From Anthoceros angustus (Eukaryota > Plantae > Anthocerotophyta): a DNA stretch of 64,000 nt. Location of the stretch: the NCBI GenBank assembly GCA_010909165.1, contig VJWM01000044.1, positions 496,001 through 560,000 on the forward strand, read 5' to 3'. Below the pieces are notes generated by a model, which was not told the DNA's origin, did no database searches, and worked only from the letters and a program-made list of their open reading frames with translations. Of this stretch, positions 2,274-40,807 are shown one piece after another. Position numbers and translations under genes: made by a program. Every line of letters begins with the position of its first letter. Positions within the stretch are counted from its first letter, which is position 1.

Positions 2274-3554
2274 CTATGCCATGATCTTGGCTGACTTCAG
2301 GTACAAGCTGTCCATGACCTTGCTGATGTTAGATATGGTGTCCAAGGTTGCAGGGTATATCCCATCAGGCTTGATGTCGTCAAAAATAATGAGACAACCA
2401 GCTCCTTGATCCAGAGTCCCTGAAAACTTCTTGTCCAAAATCATCTGGGAGAGTTTCTTCTCAACAGCATCTACTGGGAGGCCAATAAGGTCAGAGATGT
2501 GAGAAATCTCCACCCTTGAAAAAGGCTCAATCAGACGGCAGAGGTTCTGCTCCAGCAGTGTGTCATACAGTGATGACAGATGACGATGCACAATGGGATC
2601 CTCTTCTAATTGATCCCTGTAGGCGTTCAAAGCCTCCTCAAAAGCCTTGAGAGAGCGTTTGGCATATGCCTCTGCCACTGCCGACATTGCATCAAGCTCC
2701 GGGCCATTGTATTTGAGACCGGCCTTGGACGAAATCAAGCCACCGACATCCTCAGCTTGATTGGTCATGATTTTGCATAGCAGCATGTACTTGAGCGCAA
2801 ACACCGCTCGAGAATCCTCTAGGGCATTGAAAGCCTCGAAGGCTTCGAAGAAGTAACTGAAGCCGGTCTTGTAATCTTTCTCCTCGGCGTGGAGAATCCC
2901 ACTCTGAAGATCAATAGTCCCCTGCTGCGCTGGCGGCACATAAATAGCATTGGCCGCCGTCCTGGCAGCCGTCAAAGCAGCTTTGGCCTTGGCCAAATTC
3001 CTCAAGGAGAAGTGCAGCTTGCTTTCCAGCAAGTCGATATCCACCAGCAACAATTTGTCATCCAGGCGCCGCACTTCCCTAACTAGGTTAGGCAACAGAG
3101 ACAAAACCTCCGAAAACTCCTTGCTCTCCATCAACAGAGCTGCCAGCCTCGCCTCCACTCTTTGCCGCAGGAAGGTCCTCTTCTCCACCCGAGTCCACTC
3201 CACCATCTCGCGGCATAGCGAAATTTGCAGCGCCGTGGTCCCCGGGATCTTAGCTACCGCATCAATGATACCTCTCACAATTTTGGCAGTCTTGGCCTTG
3301 GGAATGAGCAGGAAGAAGGGGCGCAGCTCCGTGAGCAGGCTCCTGAGATCCTCTCCCCTTCTCTCCGCTGCCAGCAGGTCAGACAGAGACGCAATTGCCA
3401 CCTCCTTCACCCGAATAGCTTCATTTGTGGCCGAAGGATGCTGAATGATCTGGTGAAACAGCTGAATGGCCTTGGCAGGATCGACTTCCCGAATCTCCTC
3501 CGCTTGCGCAAGCGACTCCGCGTTCGGCACCAACGACGAGGTGGATGCAGCCAT
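2274..3554 (-). CDS. RPN6: 26S proteasome lid subunit RPN6/PSMD11, intronless CDS
   Basis: Motifs IPKAKTAKIVR, EKRTFLRQR, ARTAANAIY, SGILHAEEKDYKT, and PCI domain LLEQNLCRLIEPFSRV...LSQMILDKKFSGTLDQG. First in-frame ATG at 3554. Confidence 0.96.
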   Translation of the reverse strand: MAASTSSLVPNAESLAQAEEIREVDPAKAIQLFHQIIQHPSATNEAIRVKEVAIASLSDLLAAERRGEDLRSLLTELRPFFLLIPKAKTAKIVRGIIDAVAKIPGTTALQISLCREMVEWTRVEKRTFLRQRVEARLAALLMESKEFSEVLSLLPNLVREVRRLDDKLLLVDIDLLESKLHFSLRNLAKAKAALTAARTAANAIYVPPAQQGTIDLQSGILHAEEKDYKTGFSYFFEAFEAFNALEDSRAVFALKYMLLCKIMTNQAEDVGGLISSKAGLKYNGPELDAMSAVAEAYAKRSLKAFEEALNAYRDQLEEDPIVHRHLSSLYDTLLEQNLCRLIEPFSRVEISHISDLIGLPVDAVEKKLSQMILDKKFSGTLDQGAGCLIIFDDIKPDGIYPATLDTISNISKVMDSLYLKSAKIMA

Positions 3555-4391
3555 GGCTGCCTTCGTTGCGCAGCTGGCGCTCGAACACAAAAAGACCAGC
3601 ACCTCTCTCTCGCGCCCACACCCTAATTAAAAAGCACCAGTGTGTACCGCGCCTAGGGTGCGGGGTCTCTTTTGCTTCGCTCCCTGACCAGGCAGATATG
3701 TACATACATAGCGTAAGCTGTATACAAGTGTACGTATTCATTAGTTAGCAATTATTCAAGTTATGTTAAGCCGTTGCCAGCTGTTTGTACTGTTTGTTCC
3801 ATAGCTGCCCGCGCGCGCATCGTGTGATCGGCCTCGGGATTTAGCAAGGCTCGCGACTCCGTGCCACGTGAGTCCAAATGTAGGGAAGGAATCCTGGTTC
3901 TGTCTTCACACTCTGGCAAGGAAGGATATTTTCGCTGACGGGAAAAAAGAATGGTCTCATCGTAATTGAAGCAAAGCATGGGATACATCATGCATCTACA
4001 CAGCCTGATGTATCCCAAGCTCCTTTCCACAAAGTATGGCAGCAGTCTGTCGCGTTTCCGTTGTGCAGGGGCAGAGTTAACCTTGGAGAACCAAACTATG
4101 TATCACAAGAGAGTCACAGGATTTATCGCAAGAGACCCTAAGTGAAGAGGTCTAGACCTCAGAATTGCATCGGAATTTGTCACACGGTCTCCTCTCACGA
4201 TAGACCTAAAACCTGAAGTAGATGGAACAACTGAGAGGTTGGAAGATGATACGAATTCAGGACTTGAAAAATACGCAGGCAGCAGCAGTGAAAGGAGGTG
4301 TAGTCTATATGAGCACAGAAGCATGCGTGGAACCGAACTGCAGATCAGACATACAGCTTGCAATAAGGAGAAGAAGAAAGCAGTTTAGGGG

Positions 4392-16900: not shown

Positions 16901-19900
16901 TAGTTGAATAGTAATGCTAGCCACCTCATCATCACTCTGAACCTCCAAAAATATGACACCAAGCTGCCTTGGTTTCACAAAAAGTAAAGCCAAGAAATGG
17001 TGGAAGTTGGGGTCGCCAGTTGGAATTATTGATTCTCCATTTGCCGACACATCAGATTCAGAAGAGAGAACTGGCTTCTTCACTTCTATTTCAAGCCTAC
17101 AAACTTCCAGACAAAACTGTAAAAAGTACTTCACTGAGGAAGATTTCAATCTCAAGTGAGAGTCTCTTTCTGCTGGGGTAAGAGCCTCAATAACATGATC
17201 ATCCTGTCCACTCAGCATGCATTCAAGATATCTGGGTATCTCGGCAAGAGTTCCCAAGCCCTGTAACCTTTCTCTACCCACCAACTTCTCTTGTAGGGCC
17301 CACGTAAGCCAATGCCACGACCTTGAAAGATCTCTGAGCCATGCTTCCACTTGAGGAATTGCCAGAAAAGATTCTGGACGCCTTTCAACTATGCCATATG
17401 AATCAAGCTTGACACGAGATTCATCTTGTAGAACAAACCAACTTGCTGCTGAGCCACCTGCAGAGCACAGAGGTTTGAAACAGGTGAATGATCCACAAAT
17501 TTCTGAACCAGAACCAGCGAAGAGATTAAAGGAGTGAGAGACAAGGACTGAGGCAGGGGACTCGAATCCTGTGACACTGTATTCTAGCTGATACCTGGAA
17601 GTGACAGGCAGATTGAAGAAAATAGACGCATGCACCTCAAACGACACTTCTCTTGTGGTCTCCCTGTCTCTAGAAATAACCATCCCAGGAAGTCATCAAT
17701 GGTTTGAAAAAGGAGCCTGTGCTTGTTCTTTTCTTGGAGAGACGCGAGTGATAGCTTGATCAACTTTTCCAGGTAACCAAGTGCCCTATTGAGCTGCTTC
17801 ACCGTTCCTGTTCGAGTAAATTCATGGTTAGCCAAGCTTGCAGCGAGCTCCACCATGACCATCAGGCACATTGTCCCAGACAGCAAACTTACCAATCTGC
17901 TCACTGTCACTTTCAGCAAGGCGCAGGCTTTTAACAGCATAAAAAGTAAACTCAAGAATATGCCGTCCAACAATGCTATTGTTTTGCCTCAGCACTGGAT
18001 ACATGTGCTGTGCAGCCATAGCAGCGCCCAGGCGGTGGTAGGCATTAGGATGGTCAAGGCGGTTGTATATGCGACGAAGCGTGGATGTAACATTCACAAA
18101 GTTGTCAACCTCCACAGGAGAATGGCGAACAGACCAATGCAAGAACTCCCCAAAACAGTTGGCACAAAATTCTCTGCACAACCGACGAAATGGTTGAGCT
18201 TGGATGTCACAACGAGTATCTAAACAGGATGCACAAGATGAAAGACAACCTCAGGGGTCCATGATGACACACCTAAGGGAGCCATTCTCAGCTTGAACTA
18301 GCCCATCTAGAATGCTGTCCAGAAGAGCCATTGTATCGGGGTTCTCTTTGTTGACATTGCTAGTCAGCCAGTGAATAAGCTGCTTACAGAACTCCTGAAA
18401 AATTTGTCGTGTAACCTAAACAATGAAATTTTTAAAGAGTCAGCGTAACCCAAACAATCACGATATTCAAGAGCCAGTGTGTTCCACACGGACTGCAAGC
18501 TATACTCTTGTCCGAATGCTAATTCAGTCCGGGCAAACCTTGCAATATCTTGAAAGGAACAGGCAGAGATGCATTACTGTTGCATCGAGTGAACTTATAC
18601 CAGATCCACATCTGTAGCCAGCTGCAGAATGCTAGGGAACACCCTTCTGTAGATCTTGTCAAATGGCACCTGCAGCAACCAAGCATGCTTCAATCCATCA
18701 AGGAGTATGTTTCAGAGCAATGCTGTCTAAATCATTCCATCTTCAACTGGACCACATTAGCAAAGGATGTAGATGGTCTTACTCTCTCTGAGTTTGCAGC
18801 TCTCGTTTGCAAGGGTCCCTTTGCTGCACTCCCTAGCATCAAGAGGCAAAGAGCATGAAGGAGTTCACATGCAGTGATCTTTGTTCTTCTGTCACTAGAG
18901 AAAAGTCCAAGTTCCACCACTCTTGGTAGTAAAGTATCTACAGGGCACGCACTCTGTCAGCAAACATGGGACACACTAGAAAGAAGATGCATGCGCTCTG
19001 ATTACTCTAAGCATGCACCGAGCGCCCATCAGCATCACAAGAATCTCTCCAGATCAGGGTACATGATATTTCTCCCTCAAGATCAGGGTCTGTTCTCCTA
19101 CCACCATTGATATCCTATTAACTTCTGAAGGGAGGTGGCTTACCAAGCCAAATATCAGGTTTTACATCCCTGAATGGAAGGACATACTTCACACGGTCAC
19201 CAGAGTCCCAAGAAAGTCCACCAGGTCCGGCAATTTGCAAATGATTGGAACCTGTTACCAGGTAATGCGCAAATCTGCCGATGCGGCCAAGAAATTGCTG
19301 AACCCTGACTTGAGTTTTCTGAAAAGGCTCTGGCTGCCAATCGATGACAAATCCTTGTAAGTACCAGCATGCAAAGTGAAACAACAAAATCACTGCACAC
19401 TTTCACCGAGAATGTTCGACCTCTATCCTCTGCTTAGCTGATCGTGCTGTTGTACTTCTGGTGCTCTTCAAAGAAGAACCTTGTCGTTTAGCTACATCAG
19501 GATCATCTAAAGAGGCTGATGATTCCACCTCAATTAGGTAGTCACCTAACCCGGGGACAATCCTGTGCAGGTAAGACTCAAGCTCTCTTGGTCGAAACAA
19601 CAGCTGCCTTTCCAGTGCATCCATAGCAACCATCGCCAGGGGGTTGTATGTGTTGCCATGTAAAGGAAGAATACAAATCTACCAGACTGTATACTGTCTG
19701 CAAGAGTGACTACCATGCACCAGACTCTTTCTTGCTGCGACAGACACCTTCACCACAAGCCCCACAGATCTGCTTAGACAAGCACATACAACACACAAAA
19801 CTAACTACAAAAGGCAAAGTAAAAGGATATCTTAGGCCGATTCTCAATGCATTGTGAAGTGGGCCAACCATGGAAGAGATCCCAATCAATTCAGGAGGTG

Positions 19901-24014: not shown

Positions 24015-27000
24015 TCATTGATCAGGCTCGGTGACGAGCTTCAGCTTGAGGCCCATGCTGAGCAGCTCCTGGTACAACAGTTTGCAGGCGTAAGGAATTT
24101 CCAGCTCCACTACGCTCTTGGGAGAGCGGCAGCACAGGCACATGGGCTGTTTTCCGATGCTCTTATGGTCCCTAGTGACCATGAGATGGCAGGTCTTGCA
24201 GTACAAGATTCTGTAGAAATCGGAGAGCACGAAGGTCCTCTCCCAGACCATCCGGGCGCCACCGTGGGCGATGAGGCAGTCACGCTCCATGGTCCCGAAC
24301 CGGACGCCTCCGAACTGGTCCCGTTGCTTCACGGGCTGGCGGGTGAGGGGATTTCGTCGCCCCTCTCCGCGGTATTTGATGGTCTCGGCCACCATGTGGT
24401 TCAGACGTTGGTAGAAGGCGGGGCTGATGGTGATGAGGGCTTCCATCTCGAGCCCCGTCTGGCCGTTATACATGGTCTCCTGGCCCAGCTTCTGGTAGCC
24501 TAGTCTGTGCAGCTCTGCTGCGATGGTCTGGCGGGTGAGGGGAGAGAAGGGCGTGGCATCGCTTCTGCCGAGGCAGTGGCTGGATTGGCGCGCAGGAACA
24601 GCCACCGCCTTGGCGTGCAGGAACTCCATGAGCTGGCCCAGAGTCTGCCTGCTGGGGAAGGCATGGGGGTTGATGATGATGTCCGGGACGATGCCGTCTT
24701 GGGTGAAGGGCATGTCCTCCTGGCGGAACACCTTGCTGATCACGCCCTTCTGCCCGTGTAGGCTGCTGAACTTGTCTCCGACTTCAGGGGCCCGCTGCTT
24801 CCTCATGCGCACTTTGGCGAGGTGGTAGCCGTCCTCTTGGGTGGTCTGGATCACCTGATCGATGCGCATGCCTTGGTGTGAGAGGCGAGCTTTGCTGTCT
24901 TTGCTGCTGATGTCGGTCATGTGGAGTTTGAAATTGCCCGCATCCTCTCCCCCTCTGCCGGCAATCACTTCGCCGAGGGACAGTCTGTGGTTCAGGGGCG
25001 GGAAGCCATCGCTCTCCAGGTGGTCGGAGCCGTCGGGCATCCTGCTGTGCTTGCCATACCCTTCCCCAATGAGCAGGGTGCACTTCTCCGTCCTGTAGTG
25101 CATTGAGCAGAAGAGCCCCCGATCTATGGCCGACTGGTTCATGATCATGGAGTCTTCCTGGTTGTATCCGAGGTAGCAAGCTATGGCCACGATTGCGTTC
25201 TGGCCGTTCGACAATTCATCCTTGCCCAGGCAGGCAGCAGCTCCTGTATTCACCAGCTGGCGTTGCGGGTAGAAGAGCGCATGCGCATTAGTGTCCGACC
25301 TTGCCCGCAAGTTGGTTGTGTAGTTGCCGATGGCCTGCTTGCTATGCTTCTGAGCTTGGTGAGTGTTCCTGGAGCTCTGGTTGTGATTCGCAAATGGAAT
25401 GCTGGAGGCTCCTACACCGAACAGCAGTAAGGGATGGAGCTCGCAGTGCGTGTATGAGCCTCGGTGCGGGTCCTTTTGCGCTGAGGCCAAATCCTCCATG
25501 TCGACAGCAATCAGCGCAGATTCCTCCTCCTCCACTCCCAGGAACTCCACAACGCCCTCCTGTAGGAGGTAGCTGAAGCCATGCTCAGGAGCACTATTCA
25601 GGTGAGCAATATGCTTTGCGTGGATCTTCAGCTTCTGATCTTCCACAATCAGCAACGGTCGCAATGTTCGGCCTGCATCTGCATATATCCTGACCTCCTG
25701 CATCTTGCCATCCTGAACGATCTCCAGCTCATTGAAACCCCTGACCCCCTGTTCGTGGCGTCGCAACTCCCGCACCTCGTGGACCAGGCTGTCAGGCTGG
25801 TGGTGGCAGCCTACCCAGCTCCCGTTCAGAAAAACCTTCCAAGATCTCCTAACTGTCTCGATGCTTGCCATGTTCAACGTTTCCATACCTAAATCCTCAA
25901 GGAAGCCATGGACGATATCCTTCGCAAAATCAGCAGACAAAAAGCTGGACAGAGCAAGCGTCTTCACCAACCCGGAGTTCTCACCCTCAGGATTTTCTAA
26001 AGGACAAACTCTAGACCAATGCGAGTAATTCAGATCACGCGCAGTCGGATCAGCATATCTTCCTTCAGCCCTCATTTTACGAAGCTGGGAGAGCACGCTC
26101 AACGGATTGGTCCGTGACAGATCCCCCACTACTCCAGTCATCTTGGCACTCCTGACACCGATAGCACTCCATTCCCCCGACGAAAATGCTCGTTGGAAGC
26201 CTAACGTGATCAGCTTGGAATCTGTCAGTGTGGTAAGCTTGTTCAAGCTTAAGCCCTTCTTGGAGCTCAAAGCCTTCTGTATCCGCCTCCTCAGTTCAGT
26301 CTTATATCGGCTCATTTGGTTCCGAAACTCCAGACTCATCAGATACCCAGCCAGATCCACACGCTTGTTCCTGAGGTCATCTTTGTCATCGACTTCATCC
26401 CGGCCCAGGTAACAGCAACACAGCCTGTACACCATGTACCCGAGCACAAACGCTTTTGCCTTGTTGCCGAGGCCCTCTTGATCAAAGAGCTTGCTCAAAG
26501 CATTCTGCGCACTGGCAACTTCATCAGGTCCCATCCCATCCTTCACCTTGGAGCCGATGAACTTCAACGAATCCAGCTCCCGTGCAGAGACGTTCACACT
26601 CCTGCTTTTAAGCTTCAAGAAGCGTGACACTTCTCGGTCTGCATGGCGTATGAAACCAAGAACCAGCTCCACCATCTCCGCATCATGTGCGTCATTAGGG
26701 ATGATAGCTTGGAGCACCTCCTTATCAGACGCAACACCAAGTGCTCGCATCCCGATTACCACCGGAACCTGGTCAGGCACATCTCTCAAACGCACAGTGC
26801 ACAATTGAGATCCACATGGATCCGAACCAGCAGCAGCCTTCAGAAACACAGCGTTCCTGTACATGGCATTAGACCCCGGGCACTCCCCGAGCGAGCATGC
26901 AATAAAGCCAGGCTTCTTGCGCATGCGCGCAACAGTGATGCGTTTCCTGAAAGCATGCTCCTGCGGAAACAGCACTTTCTCTGCCCCCTTGATGATAAAA

Positions 27001-27842
27001 TAGCCTCCCTCATCGAAGGCACAGTCCTCTTTGCCTGCCCTGGAGCTCTCCTCCTTCAGGTCCGCAAGATTACACCACGCTGACTTCACCATGACAGGAA
27101 GCTTGCCGAGCAGCACCATACCAAGGTCGCTGGATTCCAACAGGCTTTCTCCTCCGTCCTTGCAAGGCACGTAAATCTCAAGCCTCATGTGCACGAATAC
27201 GTCAGCAGCATATGTCAGGTTGCGCAGACGGGCTTCCCGCGGGTATACACTGTGCCTAACCTCCTCCTCCTCCTCACCATCAGGCTCACAATCCACCACC
27301 GACACCTTCCCCTTGGAGTCGCCAATTTTGCTCGTCCTCTGCTCTTTTCCTCTCCGCCGCTTCTTCCCCTCCACACCCTGCAGCCACTCGTCATCACTCT
27401 GTGAAAAGTCGGCTGCAGCTCCGGCCCCGTCCCCGTCCCCGTCCTGATGCTGATTACGTCCCACCGGCACCGTCGCACGGTCTTGGCTCACAGTCCTCCG
27501 CGGAACGCTGGGCTTGGACACACGGACTTCTCCGAACCTGACTCTGGCTTGCCTGGGGAAGCCGTCAATCCTCTCCGCAGCAGCACTGTGATCCGGCTCA
27601 ATTTCCAGCACCGGCGCTTCGTCGATGAGCGTTTGGAGCCCGTTCGAAATGAAGTCGTTGTAGGATTGAAGCTGGTGATGAAACAGTGGCTTTTCCTGGA
27701 GAAACGCTCGAACCACGGTCCAGCGCCACCTCTCCTCCTGGCTGGAGATGTCCGTGAGCTGCATGCCAACTGGTGGTGGCTTGTAGCCAGCACTTGCGCC
27801 GTCCAGTAGTTCGCAAGGAAATTCATGCGCGCCCATTTCCAT
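24015..27842 (-). CDS. NRPD2/NRPE2-like: RNA polymerase IV/V-type second-largest subunit, paralog A (divergent, intronless, ~1275 aa)
   Basis: RPB2-family motifs YPREARLRNLTY, GGYFIIKGAEK, metal-B GYNQEDS and a C-terminal Zn site. NRPD2-type diagnostics QKHSKQAIG, NPHAFPSRQT and PLTRQPV, versus Pol II NPHAIPSRMT. Confidence 0.88.
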   Translation of the reverse strand: MEMGAHEFPCELLDGASAGYKPPPVGMQLTDISSQEERWRWTVVRAFLQEKPLFHHQLQSYNDFISNGLQTLIDEAPVLEIEPDHSAAAERIDGFPRQARVRFGEVRVSKPSVPRRTVSQDRATVPVGRNQHQDGDGDGAGAAADFSQSDDEWLQGVEGKKRRRGKEQRTSKIGDSKGKVSVVDCEPDGEEEEEVRHSVYPREARLRNLTYAADVFVHMRLEIYVPCKDGGESLLESSDLGMVLLGKLPVMVKSAWCNLADLKEESSRAGKEDCAFDEGGYFIIKGAEKVLFPQEHAFRKRITVARMRKKPGFIACSLGECPGSNAMYRNAVFLKAAAGSDPCGSQLCTVRLRDVPDQVPVVIGMRALGVASDKEVLQAIIPNDAHDAEMVELVLGFIRHADREVSRFLKLKSRSVNVSARELDSLKFIGSKVKDGMGPDEVASAQNALSKLFDQEGLGNKAKAFVLGYMVYRLCCCYLGRDEVDDKDDLRNKRVDLAGYLMSLEFRNQMSRYKTELRRRIQKALSSKKGLSLNKLTTLTDSKLITLGFQRAFSSGEWSAIGVRSAKMTGVVGDLSRTNPLSVLSQLRKMRAEGRYADPTARDLNYSHWSRVCPLENPEGENSGLVKTLALSSFLSADFAKDIVHGFLEDLGMETLNMASIETVRRSWKVFLNGSWVGCHHQPDSLVHEVRELRRHEQGVRGFNELEIVQDGKMQEVRIYADAGRTLRPLLIVEDQKLKIHAKHIAHLNSAPEHGFSYLLQEGVVEFLGVEEEESALIAVDMEDLASAQKDPHRGSYTHCELHPLLLFGVGASSIPFANHNQSSRNTHQAQKHSKQAIGNYTTNLRARSDTNAHALFYPQRQLVNTGAAACLGKDELSNGQNAIVAIACYLGYNQEDSMIMNQSAIDRGLFCSMHYRTEKCTLLIGEGYGKHSRMPDGSDHLESDGFPPLNHRLSLGEVIAGRGGEDAGNFKLHMTDISSKDSKARLSHQGMRIDQVIQTTQEDGYHLAKVRMRKQRAPEVGDKFSSLHGQKGVISKVFRQEDMPFTQDGIVPDIIINPHAFPSRQTLGQLMEFLHAKAVAVPARQSSHCLGRSDATPFSPLTRQTIAAELHRLGYQKLGQETMYNGQTGLEMEALITISPAFYQRLNHMVAETIKYRGEGRRNPLTRQPVKQRDQFGGVRFGTMERDCLIAHGGARMVWERTFVLSDFYRILYCKTCHLMVTRDHKSIGKQPMCLCCRSPKSVVELEIPYACKLLYQELLSMGLKLKLVTEPDQ

Positions 27843-28289
27843 CCTTCGCTCATCAGTCCACAATCCTGGCGTCCACCCTTTACGCACCCCTGCGCTGCGA
27901 ATGGGACGTAAAACACGCCACAATACTTAAAGTCTCGTCTTGGAAATGGATGTAGGAAAGATGCTCTCTATCAGTGTGAGCCCAGCCGGGAAAAATTTGC
28001 GGCCCAGCCTGGCCGGCCAAATTTCTTCCATTGCGTCCCGGCAGGGAAGCCTGTCCGAGAGGGACACAGGACCCAGCCTGAAATTAGTACTAGTCCGAAA
28101 TTATTAGGAAACATTATCATCTTATAAATATCATATATATAAGGCTTTATAAGAGTTACTATAAACCAAGAAAGAAGACTTTATTCTAAAAAAGAGATGG
28201 AAAAACTTATCTATCCATGTCAAGAGGAATAGCCCCTCGATCACGCATTTCAAAACTACCAACCGCCTGAAGAACTTCGTAGTCAGGGA

Positions 28290-29230
28290 TGTGAAAAGGC
28301 CTATTGACCACCAGTATCAAAGAAGCTGCAACTCCCACGCTCGCTGTCGTTCTGTACACTGCATTGGCCAATGCCCTTTGTAGAGCGATAGAAACCCTCT
28401 GCCGGAAGAAAGCAACAATACAAGAAAGGGGGAGGCCAACCCCATTCTTGAGGCTGTGATAAGCCTTGGCGCAGGCCTTGACGAACCTAGAGAAATCCTT
28501 GCCTATGGCTCCGTGAGTCTCGATGGCAAGGGGGACGAAGGCGTGGCCTCTTGCATAGGAGAGTACTTGTGAACCTTAACCGTCGCGCATCCCTCCACCG
28601 CCCAACCCGGAGGGTTAAGGATAACATGTTTGCAGACACTATCCCGAGTGGGATCGATTATAACCACATCAGCAATCGAAACCTGATACCCGGGTCAAAA
28701 ATAGATCAGCCCTAAGTGAAACCTCGTTGAGCAGGTGTACCCTAAATGGAAGGAACCCACCTTTCCTAGCAATAGAGAACATGACATCTCAGCGATACGC
28801 TGCCCGATACGCTGCCCACCCACAGGACAACGAGCCAAGTGCGTCCCGGAGTCATCGAGAGGGCCCCTCAACTGCAAGTTGAAAGAGAGCAAGCCAAAGG
28901 ATGGACCAAGCCCAGACGAAAACGCATCGTGGTGAAAAAAGTTGCTGGTGCGATGCAGAACGCCCGAATACTAGGTCGAGCCACAAGTCAGGAACCTACC
29001 CCCTTCCCCGAGCAAGAGTGGAGACAAACCCGAGTGGGCCTAGGAATGGAGGAATCCTAGAGAAACCAACTGTGCCCGCCCGAACTGTTTTTCCACGAGG
29101 GCTTCAACCGCCTTTGTTTTGGAATCAAATGAAACGACACACATATAACTCAATACGAATCTAAATACGCTGCAATCGCTTGAAGCCCCCGGAGTCCAAC
29201 GGGAAGAGAAGAAAAAGAGGCATGGCAACC
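28290..29230 (-). mobile_element. Degenerate 3' remnant of a CRE/RLE-type non-LTR retrotransposon
   Basis: Minus-strand translation across stops and frameshifts: LHSCSGKGVGS*L..P...FFTTMRFRLGL..P...CS*G.LDDSGTHLARCPVGG (CCHC knuckle), ADVVIIDPT, GHAFVPLAIETHGAIG, SIALQRALANAV. This is the restriction-like endonuclease C-terminal module. Boundaries approximate. Confidence 0.75.
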
Positions 29231-29536
29231 TTCGCTTTGGAGAATAAAAGAGTCATGGCTAATCTTAACGAAGCCTATATGAGAAAAAATCCTCCAGATG
29301 TGAATGATGAATTAAGAAAAGGGATGGGCTAAAAAAGCCGCTAGCGAATGCCGAATTAAGAAACGGGAGCACAAAAATGGGGGCACATGGCATTAGGTAC
29401 TTGAAGTCTCGACTGTTCTCGGATTTGATGTCAAATGTAGCGTCTCGATTTACTTCGCAAGTTGCTAACTCTGACTTAGGACGCAGAGGAGATGTAAGTA
29501 GATTACTTTACTGCATCCTTGAGCAGAAGGGAAGCC

Positions 29537-31533
<1,997 letters not shown>

Positions 31534-33070
31534 CCGGGGTGTTACGACAGAGTATTTAGAAGGGCTGCTGCACATACATTTAGCTCGTTTCCCAAAAACG
31601 AAGCGGATGCATTCTCCGAGGCAGGACAAAATGTACATACACAAGTTCAAATAGTTCCAAGGCTAACACAACCAGATGTCTGGCTCCAGGGCTAACTGCA
31701 TAATCCCTATGAAGCAATTTTGAGGTGTGTTTTGGCCAGTGAAGGATAGGAAAATAGTAAGAATTTGTTCCGTTCTTATACCTAATCTTTTCATTCTCCG
31801 TATCTTATGACAATTACCTTTTGATACGATTTTTTTCTCTAATACATACACTAATTATTTATAGTTGATAAAATTCCAAGCAGAAAATTGAAAGCGAAAA
31901 GCTGGCCAAACACAGAAAGCCAAAGTATAACCCCCTTGAGGACATGAAAAAAGACTTTGTCAAAGCTTATATCCAGTTTCATATACTATTATCTCCGGTA
32001 TTGTACGATGCTGTATGACAGCATATATGTTGAATATTATATCGAGTGGATATTTTTGTATACTGAGATTTATTTGTGAACATTATATCGAATGGATATT
32101 TTTGTATACCAAGGCCTATTTGTGTATCGCTCTACGGCATCAGCCCGTCACGACCGATAGGAAGCCATGGCACTCATGTCACTGTTGTCAAGGCGAGGGT
32201 GAGAAACATATTACTTATCTATATATCGCAAACAATTATTTTGGTCTAGTACACATGTGGAATTAAAAAACTTCTTTGTACATGTCCTAGATAAACTCTG
32301 ACGTTATATCAAAATTTCTCATGTCCAAACTAATATTTACATCAAGGCACCTTCCCACAAATAAATGTATATGAGGTAACATGCAACTTTTTAAAGTTCA
32401 AAATTTTCTTATATAAAGTGATTTAAAATTTACTACCACTTTCATCATAAGTTTTGTATATTGAATTTATTATATATACATTAAATTATTATCCTTATAT
32501 TATACATATATTAGCTAGCAAGTATATGGTATAGCGGAACATGCGAATATTTGTACCTCTTTTCCCACTCTCAATTCTGGGACCTACGGTCGGGGAACGC
32601 GGGGAAGCAGCAACGATACCGTAACACGATGTTGGCGTTTCATAAGCGATTTCACATGGGGCGTGATTTCTGTAAGCTTTCTGTTGCCATGAGGAGTGAT
32701 GAGTTGCTGTCACGCTTCCAGTGCCGGCTCGGGCAGTGGAAGCTATACGGCGGCATATTAACGGCTGTCCGCCGCTTCCCGCGCTCCCCAAGCTTGCTCT
32801 CGAGCATTACAGAGTCGCCTGCTTGCGAGCAGCGTTGGGGAGCTTCAGTCACGCAATTGACTGTGTGCATGCCTGCTGTGGAGCGGAGGGAGTCGCCAAT
32901 TTTGCAAACGAGAGGTGTCGGTGGAGTTCTTCCTTTCTCTTCAATGTGCGTGCTCGGTTTGCGAGCTCAGGTGTTTTCTCCGCTGTGGCAGGCATTGGGC
33001 ATAGCGTCGGAAGTCGTCTGAAAGGAAGCTAATTGGAGCTCCCACATCGACTTGCCTCAAGATTGTCGGC

Positions 33071-36000
33071 ATGGAGGTTGATAGGGAGGATGATTTGGAG
33101 CAGAGCGACCTGTTGAACGAGGACGCGGAGATGAAAGATGCCGGGATAGGAGGCGGCGGTGAAGCTGGCTTGTTGTCAGGTCGGTGGGACTCGCCGCAGC
33201 TGCGAGGGGGACGGTGGTGTAGAATTGAGCTGAGCGAGTTTAGTTTGCGTGATGGCTGAAGCTTGTGGTTGAACAATTGTTGGCTTGTCTTGTCATGCAG
33301 AGGGGGAGGGGGGGGAGAGTGCGGACAAGGGGGCGTGCCCCGGACTTCCGAACATGGAGATGGATACCGGAGGAAGTCGAAGGGGGCTGAAGGATATTTC
33401 TGACGAGGTGCAGAGGATGGTTTGGACGATAGTGAAGGCGTTCTTCAAGGAAAAGACTCTGGTTGCGCACCAGGTTTCGGCGTTCAATGATTTCATGAAC
33501 TTCGGGTTGCAGAGACTGATCGACGAAGCTCCTGTTCATGAGATACCCCCGGATCACAGTCCCGCTGCAGTCCGTCATGACAACCTTCCGAAGCAAGCCC
33601 GGGTTAGGTTCGGGAAGGTGCATGTTGTGAAGCCGAACATTTCGATGAAGCCTCCCAAGCCGGTTGTCAATTTTGGAGTGCAGGATGCGGACAAGAAGGC
33701 TGCAGATGGTGACAAAGAGACGTGGGGAGTGGGAGAGAACGGTGGGGGAGGAAACGGTGAGGGAGGAGGGCAAGGGGCGGGCTGGGGCAATGGAGATGCA
33801 GCAGTTGATAATGGTTGGGGTGAACCCGCCCGTGAGGAAAATGGTTGGGGAGGTGCTGGTGGTGACACAGCCATGCCAGATGGCTGGGCTACCTCCGTGA
33901 AGGGACAGTGCAAGTCACCTGCTGGAGATGAAGCTGCAGCTTTATGGGGTGAAGCAGGAGATAATCAGACGAATGTTGGGGGAAGCGGTCAGAAAGGTGG
34001 ATGGGAGGAGACGAAGTGGGGTGACGACAGTGAGAAAGGATCTAACAAGGGGAAAGGTAATGGAGCATTTGATTTTGAAGGAGACGAGGTAAACTACGGT
34101 CTGAAAGCAGGGAAAGGGAAAGGGAAAGGGGTAGGGAAAGCTCATGAAGACGAAGGAGTAGACTATGGCAAAACTTGGTGTGGCGATGAGGGAATAGAGT
34201 ACGGCAGCATGGCTTCCAAAGGGGGCAAACTGCCTGCTGAGGACGATGAAGTTGCTTTTGGCATCAAGGCCTCTAAGGGCAAACTGCAAGCTGGAAAAGA
34301 AGGGGTGTGGAAACAGGCATGGAAGGGTGACAGTGATGGAAACAACGAAGAGGATCCCAAAGATCGAGGCAAGGGGGTCGGGAAAGCTAAAGGGAATGGC
34401 AAACTTGATGCAGAACAGCAGACAGTGAAACCTAAGGGAAGAACTAAAGGAACTGCTGCAGACAGAAAGAAAAAGGGGAAAGCTGTTGAAGGTGATCAGG
34501 CGGATGGAGGAGTACAGGATGCAACAGAGAAGAGAGGGAGTGGTGGAAAGAAGCGGAAGTCTCGAAAGGAGACCCACGCTGAGGCAGAGGAAGAAGATGT
34601 TCGCACTGTTCTTTACCCTAGGGAGGCTCGGCTGCGGAACTTAACATATGCTGCTGATGTCTATGTTGACATGACGGTTGAAATTTATGTGTCTCCTTCG
34701 GCTGGAACGACCTCCAAAGCTGGCAAGTCCGGGTCTGCAGATAAGTCATCCAGCTCCAAAGGCTTCTCTGAAGGCCGACCTGCAGAAGGGGAAGAGAGAA
34801 TTCTGGAAGTAAGGTCCCTCCCTCGTGAGCATCTGGGGAAGATACCTGTTATGGTGAAATCAGAATTTTGCAATCTTCACGGTCTGGATAGCAAGCGGGT
34901 AGCAAAGGAGGACGATGCTTATGACATTGGTGGGTACTTCATTATTAAAGGTGCAGAAAAGGTGTTTTTTGCACAGGAGCAGCCTTTTATACACCGCCTT
35001 ACGCTCTCTAGGAACAAAGACGGATTAACTGCGTCTTCTGGTGGAGGGTGCAAGGGAACTAACTTGGTGTTCAGAAACACTGTCTATCTGAGGAGAAAAG
35101 TACCTCAAAAAGGATCTGTGGAGGCAAGTGGACCTCTTGTATGCCAAGTTCGTTTGAGAAGGGTCGGAGATACCATCCCTTTGGTGATTGTGTTGCGAGC
35201 ACTTGGGGTCGTTGCAGACAGAGATGTGCTTAAGATTGTATGTGTTGATCTTGAGGATAGCAGCATGGTGGAGGTGGCACTCCCATTTATTCAAGATGCA
35301 GACAAGGAAATGACTGATTTCCTTGAAACTGAAGGGAAGAATCCTAGTAAGGCACGTGAGAAAAAAAATGCCTTGAAGTACATCTTCTCAAAGATGAAAA
35401 CCAAGCCAAAAGACTATCTTCAGGGTGTTACAGAAGTTCTGGGCTTACTTTTTCAGGAGCAGGTTATCAACTCGGAGGTCGTGCAAGAACAGAGATCTGC
35501 GCCGGAAACAGAGGCCCTAAATGACCATGCAAAGGCACTCCTGTTGGGGTACATGGCGCACAAACTTTGTTGCTGCTACTTGGGACGTTTGGACGTGGAT
35601 GACAGAGATAACTTCAGGAACAAACGTCTGGATTCAGCAGGTCACCTGCTAAGTCTGGAGTTCCGGAACCTTATGGTGAGGTTCAAGAACGAGATGAAGA
35701 GGAGGATTCAAAAGTCTTTTGCCAAAGCGAGCGTCAACTTCAGGCTAGATACCTCCATTTTCACCTTAGGTTTCCAGAGGGCCTTCTCTACAGGAAACTG
35801 GAGTGCTCGGGGTGACATGAACAGCAAGTGCACAGGAGTGATATCAGATCTGCCACGTGCAAATCCCATGAGTGCATATTGCCAGTTGAGAAAGACAAGG
35901 ACGCAGGTCAATTACATTGCAAAGGCAACAAATGCCAGGTACTTGAACTACTCACATTGGGGCCGAGTGTGTAGCTTGGAGACTCCTGATGGTGAGAACT

Positions 36001-37961
36001 GCGGCCTGGTGAAGAGTCTTGCACTGACGAGCTTTGTCAGTGTTGAATCGTCCGAAAAAATTGTTCATGACTTTCTCGCGGAAGTGGGAATGACAAAGGC
36101 CAACTCGGTCGGAACTGATTATGAGTTAATGCTGAAGTCAGATAAGGTTTTCCTTAATGGCAAGTGGGTTGGCTGTCATGCTGACCCGGACGGTCTTGTC
36201 AGGGGTATGCGCAACCTGCGCCGGCAGCAGTTCCTGAACAGTGAGGTGGAAATTGTTCAGGACAAAAAGATGAGGGAGGTTCGTATATATACAGATGCAG
36301 GCAGACCACTACGACCGTTGCTGATCGTAGAGGACCAAAGGCTTAGGTTGAATGTCAAGGACATAGAGCACCTGGAATCTGGCCCAGCCCATGGGCTCAC
36401 CTATCTCTTGGAGCGAGGGGTGCTGGAGTTCCTTGGGGTGGAGGAGGAAGAAGAGGCGCATATTGCAGCTGATACTGCTCAGTTGGAGGGTGCCCAGGGA
36501 AGTCCTGATGCCCTCGCTTTCACACATTGTGAGATCCATGCCCATCTAACGTATGGCCTAGGTGCCTCTGGAATCCCCTTCGCAAACTACAATCAATCTT
36601 CTCGAGATATGCAGCAGGCGCAGAAACATGGCAAGCAAGCCATTGGGAATTATGCCACTAATTTGCGAGCAAGATCAGACACTACTGCCCATGAGCTGTT
36701 CTATCCTCAAACTCAGTTAGTGAAAACGGGAGCCATCAGCTGCCTGCAGATGCCTGAGCTGGCGAATGGTCAAACCGCGATTGTGGCAATTGCGTGCTAC
36801 AGTGGATACAACCAGGAGGACTCCCTTATTATGAACCAGTCTTCCATAGATCGGGGACTATTTCGTTCCTTTCACTACAAGACCCACCGGAGCATATTGC
36901 GGAGAGGTACAGGTGAACAGTTTGGCAAGCCCGACCCCGAGAGCGCTACAGCTACCAAGAGCCCGCAGGCGTATGAAAAGCTGGATACGGATGGTTTTCC
37001 GTATGTAGGTGCAAGCTTGGCAGTCGGTGACATTGTGGTTGGAAAGTTGAGAGTAGACAGGAACGGCGTTGGGATGCCCACAGATGCGAGTGAGAAGGCC
37101 AAAGTCTCCAACAGAGGTCGGGTGGATCAGGTGATCCTGACTACTGAAGAGGATGGAACCTACATTGCCAAGGTGCGGGTGAGGCTACCTCGGGCCCCTC
37201 AGATCGGGGACAAGTTCAGCAGTATGCACGGGCAGAAGGGTGTGATCGGCATGATTTTGCCCCAAGAGGACATGCCTTTCACCAGAGAAGGCATCGTCCC
37301 TGACATCATCGTCAACCCGCACGCCTTCCCTACCAGGCAGACTCTTGGGCAGTTGATGGAGAATTTGCTGGGTAAAGTCGTGTCTTGTCCTGTTAAGGAG
37401 GGCAAGCGGAAGCTTATGAGGAGCGACGCCACTCCCTTTACAAGTCTGACGACAGATGCCATCACGGAGGAGCTCCACCAGTCAGGATACGGACGCTGGG
37501 CCAAGGAATGCATGTATAACGGATTGACTGGAGAGAAAATGGCGGCCCTGATCAACATTGGGCCAACATTCTACCAGAGGCTGACGCACATGGTGAGTGA
37601 CAAGGTGAAGTATCGAGGCAGAGGATTCGTGCACCCGCTCACTCGTCAGCCCGTGAAGGAGCGCGACAGGCACGGTGGGGTCAAGTTTGGAGAAATGGAG
37701 CGAGACTGTATGATCGCCCACGGCGCAGCCATGACTCTGCGAGAGAGAACCTTCGTCCTCTCCGATTTCTACAGGATCTACTACTGCAAGGGCTGCGAGG
37801 TTCTGGCAAGCATGGACAACTGCACCAAAATCCCCAGCTGCCGCATCTGCCGCCAAGTAAAGCACGTAGTTCAGCTGGAAATCCCCTACGCCTGCAAGCT
37901 TCTTCATCAGGAACTCCTGAGCATGGGCATCTGTGTAAGACTCATAACAGAGCCCTGTTAA
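33071..37961 (+). CDS. NRPD2/NRPE2-like: RNA polymerase IV/V-type second-largest subunit, paralog B (~1589 aa; exons 33071-33179 and 33301-37961)
   Basis: GYNQEDS, GDKFSSMHGQKG, NPHAFPTRQT, HPLTRQPV, GGVKFGEMERDC and RKTRTQVNY..K...ARY are NRPD2/E2-type. The upstream exon MEVDREDDLE... splices CAG|GTCGGT...GCAG|AG in phase 1 into the long ORF. Confidence 0.92.
33640..34610 (+). other. ~325-aa low-complexity insertion in paralog B with WG/GW motifs
   Basis: G/D/E/K/N-rich sequence between the conserved VKP and LYPREARLRN. It has 8 Trp flanked by Gly (TWG, GWG x3, GWA, LWG, GWE, KWG), four DE(G)[VI]x[YF]G repeats and a KKRKSRK basic cluster. Confidence 0.9.
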
Positions 37962-38978: not shown

Positions 38979-40807
38979 ATGGCATCCGTGGAGAAGATGA
39001 CGGAGGGGGCCTCCATTGCGGCGAGTGTAGAGAAAGTGAGCGCCTTCACCTCGGCGAGCGTGCAGACCGGCCCGGGCCCGGGCCCCGCCGGCATTTTGGT
39101 GCACCAGGATGCCCCCCTGTCGCTCACGCATGTGGAGCTGGCGCTCCAGGAGACCAAGGAGCAGAGGGAGCACCGCATCCGCCAGCTCTTCGCCATCTTC
39201 GACACCAGCAAGTCGGGGTACCTGGACCACGGTCACATTGAGGATGTGTTCCGCACGCTCTCCATCCCCGCGCACAACAAGTACGCCAAGGAGCTGCTCA
39301 GCGTGTGCGATTCCAACCAGGACGGCAAGGTGGATTACGACGAGTTCCGCAAGTACATGGACAACAAGGAGCTGGAGCTGTACCGGATCTTCCAAGAGAT
39401 TGACTTGAGGCACAACGGCACAATTGAGCCGGATGAGCTGCGGGAGGCGCTCTTGAGAGCAGGTACATTTCTGCTTGCCCGCCCTTGGGTCTCGTGTTGC
39501 GTGTTTGAGCCAGGGGGTGCGCTTAGTTTACGCTCTCAGGCTGTGTGCAGGGATTCCCATCCAGGACGACCAGCTTGCCATGTTTGTGGACCATGTTGAC
39601 AAGGATAACAATGGGATCATCACCTTCGCGGAATGGAGGGACTTTTTGCTTTTGCTGCCCAATGTGAAAACGCTTTCCAACATATATCAGTACTGGGAGA
39701 AGATTTGTTTGGTTGATATTGGGGAACAAGCCGTCATTCCAGAGGGGATAAGTCGCCAACTGGATGCTTACAAGTATTTCTTTGCCGGTGGAGTTGCTGG
39801 TGCTGTTTCACGAACTGCAACAGCACCTTTGGACAGGCTCAAGGTTCTGCTGCAAGTGCAATCTCATGACCAAGGGCGTGGTGTGATGTCTGGGTTAGCC
39901 AAGATTTACAAGGATAGTGGCTTTGCGGGATTCTTCCGGGGGAATGGGCTCAATGTTTTTAAAGTAGCCCCCGAGTCGGCCATTAAGTTCTATGCCTATG
40001 AACTGCTCAAGGAGTATGTGGTCAAGGTGGACGGTAGTGGAACCAAAGAAGAAATTGGAACTTGGGGACGTTTCGTGGCAGGAGGAGCCGCTGGAGCGAT
40101 TGCTCAAACTGTAATCTACCCACTGGATGTAGTCAAGACCAGGCTTCAAACCTTTCGTGCCTCCGATGGCACAGCCCCGCCCCTGATGCGCTTGTCTCAT
40201 GATATTTGGGTTCATGAAGGTCCCAGAGCCATGTACAGGGGTCTTGTTCCATCTCTACTTGGCATGATACCGTATGCTGGAATAGACTTGGCTGCGTACG
40301 AGACATTCAAAGACTTGTCACGCCGATTTTTGCCCAAGGACACAGGTGATCCTCCCTCCTGCTGCTCTTTGCTTGGACATCGCTAAACTTGCACACCCCC
40401 TCTAACTGTTTCTAGTGGATTAATTGCAGAGCCAGGTCCTCTCGTGCAGCTCGCTTGCGGGACTGTTTCAGGAGCCCTTGGAGCAACATGCGTGTACCCT
40501 CTGCAGCTCGTCAGAACAAGGTGATAAGTCTAACCGCTGTGTCTCACTGTAAGATGTTTTCTCCCCTCGGCAGGCAGAGAAAACTTTGTCTGACTGACGT
40601 GCCTGCAGGTTGCAAGCCCAACCTATGAACTCTCCAAACCGGTACAAGGGTATGGGTGATTGCTTCCGGCGCACACTAAAGAAAGAGGGTCTACGGGGCT
40701 TCTACAACGGGCTTGCCCCAAATCTGCTGAAGGTCGCGCCTGCTGCAAGCATCACTTATCTTGTGTACGAGGCTATGAAGAAACAGTTCTCTCTGAATCC
40801 GAACTGA
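38979..40807 (+). CDS. Ca2+-regulated mitochondrial ATP-Mg/Pi carrier (APC/SLC25A24-like), 4 exons
   Basis: Four EF-hands ([36 protein letters not shown]) followed by carrier repeats [18 protein letters not shown] and [11 protein letters not shown]. Confidence 0.95.

What the first reader, a model, noticed from the sequence alone, without database searches (positions are those of the whole stretch)
24015..37961. Divergently oriented pair of distinct, near-intronless Pol IV/V-type second subunits
Seen: two full-length, open NRPD2/E2-type genes about 5 kb apart around RPT2. They share derived features (EI.PDHS.AA.R.D..P.QARVRFG, LCCCYLGR, LNYSHW, RERTFVLSDFYRI, and an insertion at the same site) but are clearly diverged. 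Established: Arabidopsis Pol IV and Pol V share one functional second subunit, and NRPB2 genes are intron-rich. Inference: an old local duplication produced specialised subunits, which could give dedicated Pol IV versus Pol V subunits or an additional lineage-specific silencing polymerase.
Basis: partly seen in the sequence, partly recalled or inferred. Interest (0 to 1): 0.8.

Follow-up and report, generated by a model that had tools for sequence, protein, structure and literature searches.

The report
Two diverged Pol IV/V subunit genes
A bryophyte-grade plant, probably a hornwort, carries two intact, intron-free, head-to-head genes for the second-largest subunit of the plant-only gene-silencing RNA polymerases. 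The copies split long ago and now differ clearly, a kind of duplication already known from grasses, violets, a moss and ferns.

Summary
Gene A (24015-27842, minus strand, 1275 aa) and gene B (33354-37961, plus strand, 1535 aa) are uninterrupted ORFs. Each has all seven Rpb2 domains. They are 51% identical, lie head-to-head 5.5 kb apart, and flank an intron-containing RPT2 gene.

In trees both fall inside the land-plant NRPD2/E2 clade (100/100). They form a tight clade (100/100) with one public protein, P0001. The duplication is therefore specific to this lineage and is not shared with liverworts, mosses or vascular plants. It is old: dS is saturated.

Divergence is asymmetric:
- A evolves about 1.3-1.7 times faster than B.
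- A changes 6 of 98 universally invariant residues, including FGEMERD to FGTMERD and the D-K of HMVxDK.
- A still spares conserved columns about three-fold, as B does.
- B carries a predicted-disordered loop insertion (~320 aa between anchor motifs; pLDDT <50 over residues ~101-410) with eight G-flanked tryptophans (Ago-hook-like). A's insertion at the same site is about 90 aa and has none.

Both are probably functional, non-equivalent subunits. A Pol IV versus Pol V split, or an extra polymerase, is untested. Independent NRPD2/E2 duplications are already documented in maize, grasses (NRPF2), Viola, Physcomitrella and ferns, so this is a new member of a known kind. The scan also noted the GW insertion separately (s1-694384).

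The parts
24015..27842 (-). Gene A: intronless NRPD2/E2-type second-largest polymerase subunit, 1275 aa plus stop. This is the faster-evolving copy and has no GW motifs.
   Evidence: ORF; seven Rpb2 Pfam domains; NRPD2/E2 clade 100/100; end branch 0.60 against 0.27 for B
27246..27503 (-). Gene A's protrusion-loop insertion (about residues 114-199). It is acidic and basic, contains KKRRRGK followed by EEEEE, has a single W, and has no GW/WG.
24279..24398 (-). Gene A's substitutions in universally conserved C-terminal motifs: HMVAET (canonical HMVxDK) and FGTMERD (canonical FGEMERD).
   Evidence: Invariant in all 41 other RPB2-family rows of the alignment
25149..25169 (-). Gene A's GYNQEDS motif (metal-B acidic pair), retained.
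29531..31530 (+). RPT2 (26S proteasome regulatory subunit 4) gene with at least 5 introns, lying between the two polymerase genes. Exons were checked one by one by reference and were not joined.
33354..37961 (+). Gene B: intronless NRPD2/E2-type second-largest polymerase subunit, 1535 aa plus stop. This is the more conservative copy.
   Evidence: ORF; seven Rpb2 domains; tree; deviates at 1 of 98 invariant columns
33642..34613 (+). Gene B's protrusion-loop insertion (residues 97-420). It is predicted disordered and ends in GGKKRKSRK followed by an acidic run.
   Evidence: AF2 pLDDT below 50 and no secondary structure over about residues 101-410, between confident strands
33708..34031 (+). GW/WG cluster in gene B: 8 tryptophans in 108 aa, each next to a glycine (Ago-hook-like).
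   Evidence: No shuffle of the protein reaches 8 W per 108 aa (0 of 2000). Within the whole insertion, 8 of 11 W lie next to G, a count reached in 506 of 20000 shuffles.
36804..36824 (+). Gene B's GYNQEDS motif (metal-B acidic pair), retained.

Best explanation
Shown: genes A and B are intact paralogous genes for the second-largest (RPB2-like) catalytic subunit of the plant-specific Pol IV/V class (NRPD2/E2). They arose by a local inverted duplication of a gene that had already lost its introns. The duplication happened within the lineage of this plant (probably a hornwort), after it separated from liverworts, mosses and vascular plants, and long enough ago for synonymous sites to saturate.

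Shown: both copies have been kept under purifying selection, but they diverged asymmetrically. B stays close to the ancestral sequence. It carries a long disordered insertion in a surface loop of the protrusion domain, with a cluster of glycine-flanked tryptophans. A evolves about 1.3-1.7 times faster and is most changed in the fork and anchor/clamp domains. A has altered residues that are invariant in every other family member examined, and its short insertion has no such tryptophans.

Inferred: the two subunits are not interchangeable. The most likely arrangement is that each pairs preferentially with a different NRPD1/NRPE1-type largest subunit or with different cofactors. In that arrangement B would give its enzyme an Argonaute-docking surface near the cleft (a Pol V-like role), and A would serve an enzyme that does not need one (a Pol IV-like or other role).
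For: - Integrity and family: uninterrupted ORFs of 1275 and 1535 codons with all seven Rpb2 domains. The best solved relative is Pol IV/V subunit 2, 8hil_B, at E 4.9e-210.
- Clade: NRPD2/E2 has 100/100 support, and A, B and P0001 form an exclusive clade at 100/100 with a stem of 0.5.
- Catalytic motifs kept in both: GYNQEDS, GDKFSS.HGQKG and the C-terminal CxxC...CxxC.
- Age and selection: dN 0.32, dS 2.2 or more, NG86 dN/dS about 0.15 or lower.
- Constraint on A: A-only changes hit 7% of invariant columns against 23% of variable ones. B shows the same roughly 3-fold depletion (3% against 10%).
- Asymmetry: by Tajima counts, A has 128 unique changes and B has 76 with the Diphasiastrum outgroup (chi2 13.3). 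A deviates at 6 of 98 invariant and 36 of 263 columns that are at least 90% conserved; B deviates at 1 and 19.
- Where A diverges: in the fork domain, A-B identity is 0.61 against 0.85 for B-P0001. In the anchor/clamp domain it is 0.64 against 0.86.
- GW cluster: present in B and, more weakly, in P0001 (4 GW/WG dipeptides), and absent from A.
- Disorder: the B insertion is predicted disordered between confidently folded strands.
- Intron loss before duplication: A, B and the bulk of P0001's gene all lack the 6 introns of the M. paleacea gene.
- Precedent for paralog-specific assembly: maize and grass NRPD2/E2 and NRPF2.
Against: - There is no expression, proteomic or genetic evidence for either copy. 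Exact-sequence look-ups and a fragment search found no transcripts.
- No A-type or B-type ortholog from a named hornwort could be retrieved, so long-term retention of both copies across species is not shown.
- The order of A, B and P0001 is unresolved. The ML tree gives (A,P0001) at 89/82, and the AU test gives p = 0.066 for (A,B) and 0.28 for (B,P0001).
- dS is saturated, so branch-specific dN/dS for A cannot be estimated.
- A's changes at invariant active-site-proximal motifs, and its higher GC3 (0.685 against 0.544), fit relaxed constraint or biased gene conversion as well as they fit specialisation.
- GW clusters predict Argonaute binding only by analogy.
- The largest-subunit genes of this genome were not seen.
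Confidence: 0.6

Rival explanations
1. The copies are interchangeable isoforms. Both A and B assemble into both Pol IV-like and Pol V-like enzymes, as the single Arabidopsis NRPD2/E2 does. The pair would then be retained for dosage or for tissue- or stage-specific expression, not for different biochemical roles.
For: Both keep the full domain set and the metal-B and hybrid-binding motifs. The ancestral state in land plants is one subunit shared by both enzymes. Some documented duplicates are unequal in importance rather than clearly partitioned, as with maize 2a against 2b and 2c.
Against: Only 51-60% identity remains, and A has lineage-specific changes concentrated in the fork and anchor/clamp domains and at invariant motifs. 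A large GW-bearing insertion is present in only one copy. That is far more divergence than expression subfunctionalisation alone requires.
Confidence: 0.25
2. Gene A is a decaying or catalytically compromised copy, like Arabidopsis NRPD2b. Its ORF would still be open only because relaxation is recent, or it would act as a non-catalytic or regulatory subunit.
For: A has the longest branch in its clade (0.60). It has replaced residues invariant in all 41 other rows (E to T in FGEMERD, D-K to E-T in HMVxDK, G to S in HWG). GC3 is shifted. No transcript was found.
Against: The 1275-codon ORF has no stop or frameshift although dS is 2.2 or more since the split. Its substitutions avoid conserved columns as strongly as B's do (7% against 23% for A, 3% against 10% for B). 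The metal-B site, the GDKFSS.HGQKG motif and the zinc-binding cysteines are intact. The absence of transcripts reflects a collection that holds almost no data from this lineage: only one relative, P0001, was found.
Confidence: 0.1
3. One copy, most likely A, belongs to an additional lineage-specific polymerase together with a co-duplicated largest subunit. This would be analogous to the proposed grass Pol VI (NRPF1 plus NRPF2).
For: The pattern matches what was used to name NRPF2: a lineage-specific duplication with one long-branch paralog. A's excess change lies in domains that contact the largest subunit.
Against: No largest-subunit genes were examined, so co-duplication is unknown. Positive selection cannot be tested because dS is saturated. 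Even the grass Pol VI remains controversial.
Confidence: 0.08

Closest known systems
Maize NRP(D/E)2a, 2b and 2c, and grass NRPF2 (Sidorenko 2009; Stonaker 2009; Haag 2014; Trujillo 2018, bioRxiv 10.1101/272708)
   Same: These are lineage-specific duplications of the Pol IV/V second subunit. The paralogs are unequal, one sits on a longer branch, metal-binding residues are kept, and assembly into distinct polymerase subtypes has been proposed.
   Different: The grass copies stem from a whole-genome duplication, are far less diverged, contain introns, and have expression and IP-MS support. The pair here is a local inverted duplicate, has no introns, is about 51% identical, and has no experimental support. 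One copy also carries a GW-rich insertion not described for the grass proteins.
Viola, Allexis and other eudicot NRPD2/E2-a and -b paralogs (Marcussen 2010, PMC2834690); Arabidopsis NRPD2a and the non-functional NRPD2b
   Same: NRPD2/E2 has duplicated independently and repeatedly, with outcomes ranging from sub- or neofunctionalisation to gene death.
   Different: Those duplicates are young, often homogenised by gene conversion, and lie in angiosperms. This pair is old, strongly diverged and in a bryophyte-grade lineage.
Liverwort NRPD2/E2-like proteins (Riccia fluitans with 3 copies, R. sorocarpa, Marchantia paleacea, Calypogeia fissa) and the Physcomitrella and fern duplicates (Huang 2015, PMC4476159)
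   Same: They belong to the same clade. The liverwort proteins have a long insertion (about 150-300 aa) at exactly the same protrusion loop, ending in a basic NLS-like patch. Riccia has several paralogs.
   Different: The liverwort duplications are independent of this one, because the liverwort copies form a separate 100% clade. The M. paleacea gene has 6 introns. The liverwort insertions have few or no GW/WG motifs.
Ago-hook (GW/WG) platforms of the NRPE1 C-terminal domain and of SPT5L/KTF1
   Same: Both are disordered and rich in G, D, E and N, and hold clustered glycine-flanked tryptophans. The surrounding sequence evolves fast while the W-G motifs are kept (B compared with P0001).
   Different: The known platforms sit on the largest subunit's C-terminal tail or on an elongation factor, not inside the second subunit. 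Binding has not been tested here.

Membership tests
NRPD2/E2 (second-largest subunit of plant Pol IV and Pol V) | Complete RPB2-type architecture (Rpb2 domains 1-7 in order) | tested here: met
   All seven Pfam domains are above cut-off in both A and B.
NRPD2/E2 (second-largest subunit of plant Pol IV and Pol V) | Phylogenetic placement in the land-plant NRPD2/E2 clade, separate from NRPB2 | tested here: met
   The clade has SH-aLRT 100 in the 44-row tree and 100/100 in the careful 21-row tree. The stem is 0.6-1.2 substitutions per site.
NRPD2/E2 (second-largest subunit of plant Pol IV and Pol V) | Metal-B acidic pair (NQEDS) and hybrid-binding lysines retained, as required for Pol IV/V function in Arabidopsis (Haag 2009, cited from my own knowledge) | tested here: met
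   GYNQEDS and GDKFSS.HGQKG are present in both copies.
NRPD2/E2 (second-largest subunit of plant Pol IV and Pol V) | Clade-specific sequence states (for example K instead of H in DK.K[YF]R, against DKIHSR in NRPB2) | tested here: met
   B has DKVKYR. A has ETIKYR, which keeps the K[YF]R part but has lost the D-K.
NRPD2/E2 (second-largest subunit of plant Pol IV and Pol V) | Physical assembly with NRPD1 and/or NRPE1, and a requirement for siRNA-directed DNA methylation | not testable with these tools
   This needs IP-MS and mutants. The largest-subunit genes are not in the window.
Paralog-specific polymerase subtypes (maize D2/E2 isoforms, grass NRPF2 type) | Lineage-specific duplication with asymmetric divergence of one paralog | tested here: met
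   A, B and P0001 form an exclusive clade. A's branch is 0.60 against 0.27 for B. Relative-rate chi2 reaches 13.3.
Paralog-specific polymerase subtypes (maize D2/E2 isoforms, grass NRPF2 type) | Positive selection after the duplication, or a co-duplicated partner subunit | tested here: inconclusive
   dS is saturated (2.2 or more, or undefined), so only an average dN/dS of 0.15 or lower is available. Partner genes were not seen.
Paralog-specific polymerase subtypes (maize D2/E2 isoforms, grass NRPF2 type) | Both paralogs expressed and found in distinct purified complexes | not testable with these tools
   No transcripts of either gene are in the searchable collections.
Ago-hook (GW/WG) Argonaute-binding platform | Several glycine-flanked tryptophans in an intrinsically disordered, G/S/D/E/N-rich segment | tested here: met
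   This holds for B only. There are 8 W in 108 aa, all next to G, and the segment is 31% G. No shuffle of the protein reaches this W density (0 of 2000). pLDDT is below 50 with no secondary structure. A has none.
Ago-hook (GW/WG) Argonaute-binding platform | Direct, tryptophan-dependent binding to an AGO PIWI domain | not testable with these tools
   No AGO of this genome was in hand, and no complex prediction was run.

The most novel reading that the evidence does not exclude
In this lineage the second-largest subunit, rather than (or as well as) the largest one, would decide which silencing polymerase is built. On this reading, paralog B brings an Argonaute-docking GW platform into the protrusion next to the cleft and so defines the Pol V-like, scaffold-transcribing enzyme. 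Paralog A lacks the platform and has a remodelled fork and clamp-anchor, and so defines the Pol IV-like, siRNA-precursor enzyme. The Pol IV/V functional split would then have been achieved a second time by a different subunit.
Probability: 0.2. Interest if true: 0.75.

Novelty: new member of a known kind. Interest (0 to 1): 0.4.

Why it matters
[quoted passage not shown] Cases where the second subunit itself has split bear on how new polymerases arise (maize isoforms, the disputed grass Pol VI).

This pair adds a deep, strongly diverged example from a bryophyte-grade lineage, where the RdDM machinery is poorly known. The two genes are intron-free and adjacent, so each can easily be cloned, tagged or deleted on its own.

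The GW-rich loop in one copy gives a concrete biochemical hypothesis: Argonaute recruitment through the second subunit. The same-site insertion in liverworts and in a lycophyte suggests that a long disordered protrusion loop was an early feature of NRPD2/E2, lost later in mosses and seed plants.

The basic phenomenon, an independent NRPD2/E2 duplication, is well precedented, so the surprise value for a specialist is moderate.

Tried and rejected
- Exact-sequence look-ups of both proteins in public assemblies found nothing.
- A word search with A's C-terminal 476 aa as a stand-alone query, meant to catch short transcript fragments of close kin, returned nothing above 50% identity. Expression, and orthologs in named hornworts, could therefore not be assessed.
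- The only close relative is P0001 (Logan run SRR33208241, organism unknown). Its position relative to A and B could not be resolved. The duplication therefore cannot be dated as before or after that species split.
- Pairwise YN00 failed, and NG86 dS is saturated or undefined. I made no branch-specific dN/dS claim.
- I tried to read NRPD2 copy number for Anthoceros angustus from Supplementary Data S3 of PMC7994812. The stored row has shifted or blank cells. A cluster of IDs (AANG 000862, 000863, 000865) sits in a polymerase column that cannot be identified with certainty. I drew no conclusion from it.
- Rejected: that these are NRPB2 (Pol II) genes, because of the tree.
- Rejected: that the pair is an assembly or haplotype duplicate, because identity is only 51% and the insertions differ.
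- Rejected: that the duplication is shared with the liverwort paralogs, because those form a separate 100% clade.
- Not run: the exhaustive protein-representative search. It was flagged as costly, the family assignment was not in doubt, and it draws on the same sparse hornwort data.
- Not run: complex prediction with an Argonaute, because no AGO of this genome was in hand.
- The RPT2 exons and the two parts of P0001's N-terminus were examined piece by piece by reference.


Full report
**What is there**

The stated interval holds two very long open reading frames: 24015-27923 on the minus strand (1302 codons) and 33285-37961 on the plus strand (1558 codons). The first methionines give MEMGAHEF... 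at 27842 (gene A, 1275 aa) and MEMDTGGS... at 33354 (gene B, 1535 aa). The closest relative begins METGFEDL, which supports these starts.

Each protein has Pfam Rpb2 domains 1 to 7 in order. Rpb2_6 scores E 4.9e-105 in A and 1.5e-114 in B. They align at 51% identity over 1220 residues, and at 59% over the N-terminal 85 residues on the other side of an insertion. At DNA level only the conserved coding blocks still pair, as inverted repeats of 70-77% identity. The flanks share nothing.

The 5' ends face each other, 5512 bp apart. Between them, on the plus strand, lies RPT2. Its first exon matches 26S proteasome regulatory subunit 4 (E 2e-84 to 3e-69). The OB, AAA and AAA-lid parts sit in separate reading-frame pieces, which means at least five introns within 2 kb. 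I checked these exons one at a time by reference and did not join them. This genome therefore does put introns in ordinary genes, yet the two polymerase coding regions of 3.8 and 4.6 kb have none.

**Which family**

The best solved relative is the Pol IV/V second subunit (8hil_B, E 4.9e-210), almost tied with Pol II RPB2, so I used a tree. With 44 RPB2-family proteins (LG+C20 PMSF), all NRPD2/E2-type proteins form a clade with support 100 on a stem of 1.2 substitutions per site. These include angiosperms, gymnosperms, a fern, lycophytes, a moss and liverworts. A and B lie inside this clade. A careful 21-row analysis gives 100/100.

A and B also share clade-specific states. One example is K instead of H in DK.K[YF]R, where NRPB2 has DKIHSR.

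Earlier notes of this scan call it a probable hornwort, which I did not verify. My tree shows only that the pair belongs to none of the liverwort, moss, lycophyte, fern or seed-plant subclades.

**When and how they duplicated**

A and B group exclusively with one public protein, P0001 (100/100, stem 0.5). P0001 comes from a 5.1-kb Logan contig of run SRR33208241, organism unknown. Liverwort paralogs (three in Riccia fluitans) and conifer pairs form their own clades, so those duplications are independent.

Inside the trio the order is unresolved. The ML tree joins A with P0001 (89/82) over a branch of 0.038. The AU test gives p = 0.066 for (A,B) and p = 0.28 for (B,P0001). By identity, P0001 is nearer to B (67-68%) than to A (58%).

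The split is old: dN 0.32 and NG86 dS 2.2 for A-B, and dS is larger or undefined for the pairs with P0001.

The Marchantia paleacea NRPD2/E2-like gene has 7 exons, and its NRPB2 has at least 21. P0001's gene has one 72-nt GT..AG intron with an in-frame stop near its 5' end and is otherwise uninterrupted. The called protein is therefore N-terminally truncated.

**Are both copies alive?**

Both keep GYNQEDS (the metal-B pair), GDKFSS.HGQKG and the C-terminal CxxC...CxxC. With dS above 2, an unconstrained 1275-codon frame would not have stayed open.

Substitutions unique to A hit 7% of columns that are at least 95% conserved in the rest of the family, against 23% of variable columns. B shows the same depletion (3% against 10%). 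A is therefore faster everywhere by about two-fold, not indifferent to constraint. This argues against a dead gene, but it cannot exclude recent relaxation.

No transcript evidence could be obtained. Exact look-ups and a fragment search were blank, and the collections hold essentially nothing from this lineage.

**How they differ**

Divergence is asymmetric, and A is the faster copy:
- End branch 0.60 against 0.27 for B.
- Tajima counts of 128 against 76 (Diphasiastrum outgroup, chi2 13.3) and 114 against 75 (Ginkgo outgroup, chi2 8.0).
- A departs from 6 of 98 columns that are invariant in all 41 other rows, and from 36 of 263 that are at least 90% conserved. B departs from 1 and 19.
- A's changes include FGEMERD to FGTMERD, HMVxDK to HMVAET and HWG to HWS.

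From memory, the DDK(M/I)HAR and GEME blocks belong to the most conserved, active-site-proximal and clamp-anchoring regions of all beta-like subunits. I did not verify residue equivalence to yeast or E. coli here.

By domain, A stands out most in two places:

| Domain | A-B identity | B-P0001 identity |
|---|---|---|
| Fork | 0.61 | 0.85 |
| Anchor/clamp | 0.64 | 0.86 |

A also has a higher GC3 (0.685 against 0.544).

**The insertion**

Both proteins are interrupted at the loop between FG.V.V.KP and YPxEARLRNLTY. The gap at that loop varies widely:

| Protein(s) | Gap length |
|---|---|
| Canonical RPB2, moss and seed-plant NRPD2 | 13-16 aa |
| Diphasiastrum | 41 aa |
| Gene A | about 90 aa |
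| Liverworts | 150-300 aa |
| P0001 | about 250 aa |
| Gene B | about 320 aa |

All long versions end in a basic KKRK-like patch followed by an acidic run.

In B, residues 119-226 hold 8 tryptophans, each next to a glycine: TWG, GWG three times, GWA, LWG, GWE and KWG. The stretch is 31% glycine. No shuffle of the protein reaches that density (0 of 2000). Within the whole insertion, 8 of 11 W lie next to G, a count reached in 506 of 20000 shuffles. P0001 has four GW/WG dipeptides at the same place. A has none, and the liverworts have almost none.

An AlphaFold model of B residues 1-620, built on a 21-sequence alignment, gives pLDDT 81-93 for the flanking strands. It gives below 50 with no secondary structure for about residues 101-410. 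This is the composition of the Ago-hook platforms known from the NRPE1 tail and from SPT5L, but here it lies inside the second subunit. The scan's note s1-694384 flagged the same stretch. I confirmed the counts, but binding remains an inference.

**Interpretation**

The supported statement is that this lineage keeps two old, non-equivalent NRPD2/E2 paralogs made by a local inverted duplication of an intronless gene.

- Maize uses three isoforms in polymerase subtypes.
- Grasses have NRPF2 on a long branch beside NRPF1.
- Viola paralogs show signs of sub- and neofunctionalisation.

That step rests on no direct evidence here. My preferred mechanism is that B supplies an Argonaute-docking loop to a Pol V-like enzyme, and A serves an enzyme without it. 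I hold that mechanism at about 20%. I hold 'both functional and not interchangeable' at about 60%.

The rivals are interchangeable isoforms (about 25%), a decaying or non-catalytic A (about 10%) and a separate extra polymerase (about 8%).

**Novelty**

Independent NRPD2/E2 duplications are documented in eudicots, maize and grasses, Physcomitrella and ferns. Papers that mention hornwort NRPD2 report only its presence. I found no description of a hornwort pair, nor of a GW platform in a second subunit, but the library is incomplete.

I class the pair as a new member of a known kind. The GW-bearing insertion is the feature that could raise it to a new variant if binding is shown.

Noticed in passing
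window 7970-17683 (minus strand): Large ORFs encode DNA-PKcs CC1-2, CC3 and CC5 regions, plus a PI3K-like kinase with FATC. Together they look like a DNA-PKcs (PRKDC) gene with few introns. DNA-PKcs in non-angiosperm green plants is already reviewed ('Lost in the bloom', PMC10419180).
   Followed up: partly
window 2274-3602 (minus strand) and 29531-31530 (plus strand): Two 26S proteasome regulatory-particle genes lie within 30 kb. RPN6 is a single 442-codon ORF, apparently intronless. RPT2 has at least 5 introns.
   Followed up: partly
window 42269-43318 (minus strand); 39475-40386 (plus strand): A Ty3/chromovirus-type integrase remnant (rve plus SH3_Tf2-1) lies downstream of gene B. An EF-hand mitochondrial carrier ORF lies just after gene B.
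   Followed up: no
L001:375-446 (Logan SRR33208241 contig): The closest relative's contig has a 72-nt GT..AG intron with an in-frame stop in the 5' coding region. The database protein P0001 therefore starts at an internal Met and lacks about 135 N-terminal residues. The contig is genomic DNA or unspliced RNA.
   Followed up: yes
P0003, P0004, P0006, P0007, P0019 (liverworts) and P0021 (Diphasiastrum); L002: Liverwort NRPD2/E2-like proteins have a 150-300 aa insertion at exactly the same protrusion loop, ending in a basic NLS-like patch. A lycophyte has a 41-aa Lys-rich one. Moss and seed-plant proteins have the canonical 13-16 aa. This suggests an early, later-lost disordered loop in NRPD2/E2. 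The M. paleacea gene has 7 exons, against at least 21 for its NRPB2.
   Followed up: partly
P0005/P0008 (Cryptomeria SUGI_0299990 and SUGI_0300040); P0012/P0239 (Taxus KI387_002146 and KI387_002161): Conifers also have pairs of NRPD2/E2-like genes with neighbouring locus tags on one chromosome. Local duplication of this gene therefore looks recurrent.
   Followed up: no
window 34080-34320 (gene B, about residues 243-320): The Lys/Gly-rich second half of B's insertion holds four degenerate repeats of D-E-x-[VI]-x-[YF]-G-x-K (GDEVNYGLK, DEGVDYGK, DEGIEYGS, DDEVAFGIK). Single look-alike copies occur in P0001 (RDEVDFGL) and in A (DDEWLQGV). This may be a conserved short linear motif of unknown role.
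   Followed up: no
window 34716-34820 and about 35470-35530 (gene B): B has two further insertions that A lacks. One is Ser/Gly/Lys-rich, about 30 aa, after EIYVSPS, and the model gives it low confidence. The other is about 17 aa, in the lobe region.
   Followed up: no
window 32031-32122: A 46-nt AT-rich tandem duplication (85% identity) lies in the RPT2-gene B intergenic region.
   Followed up: no
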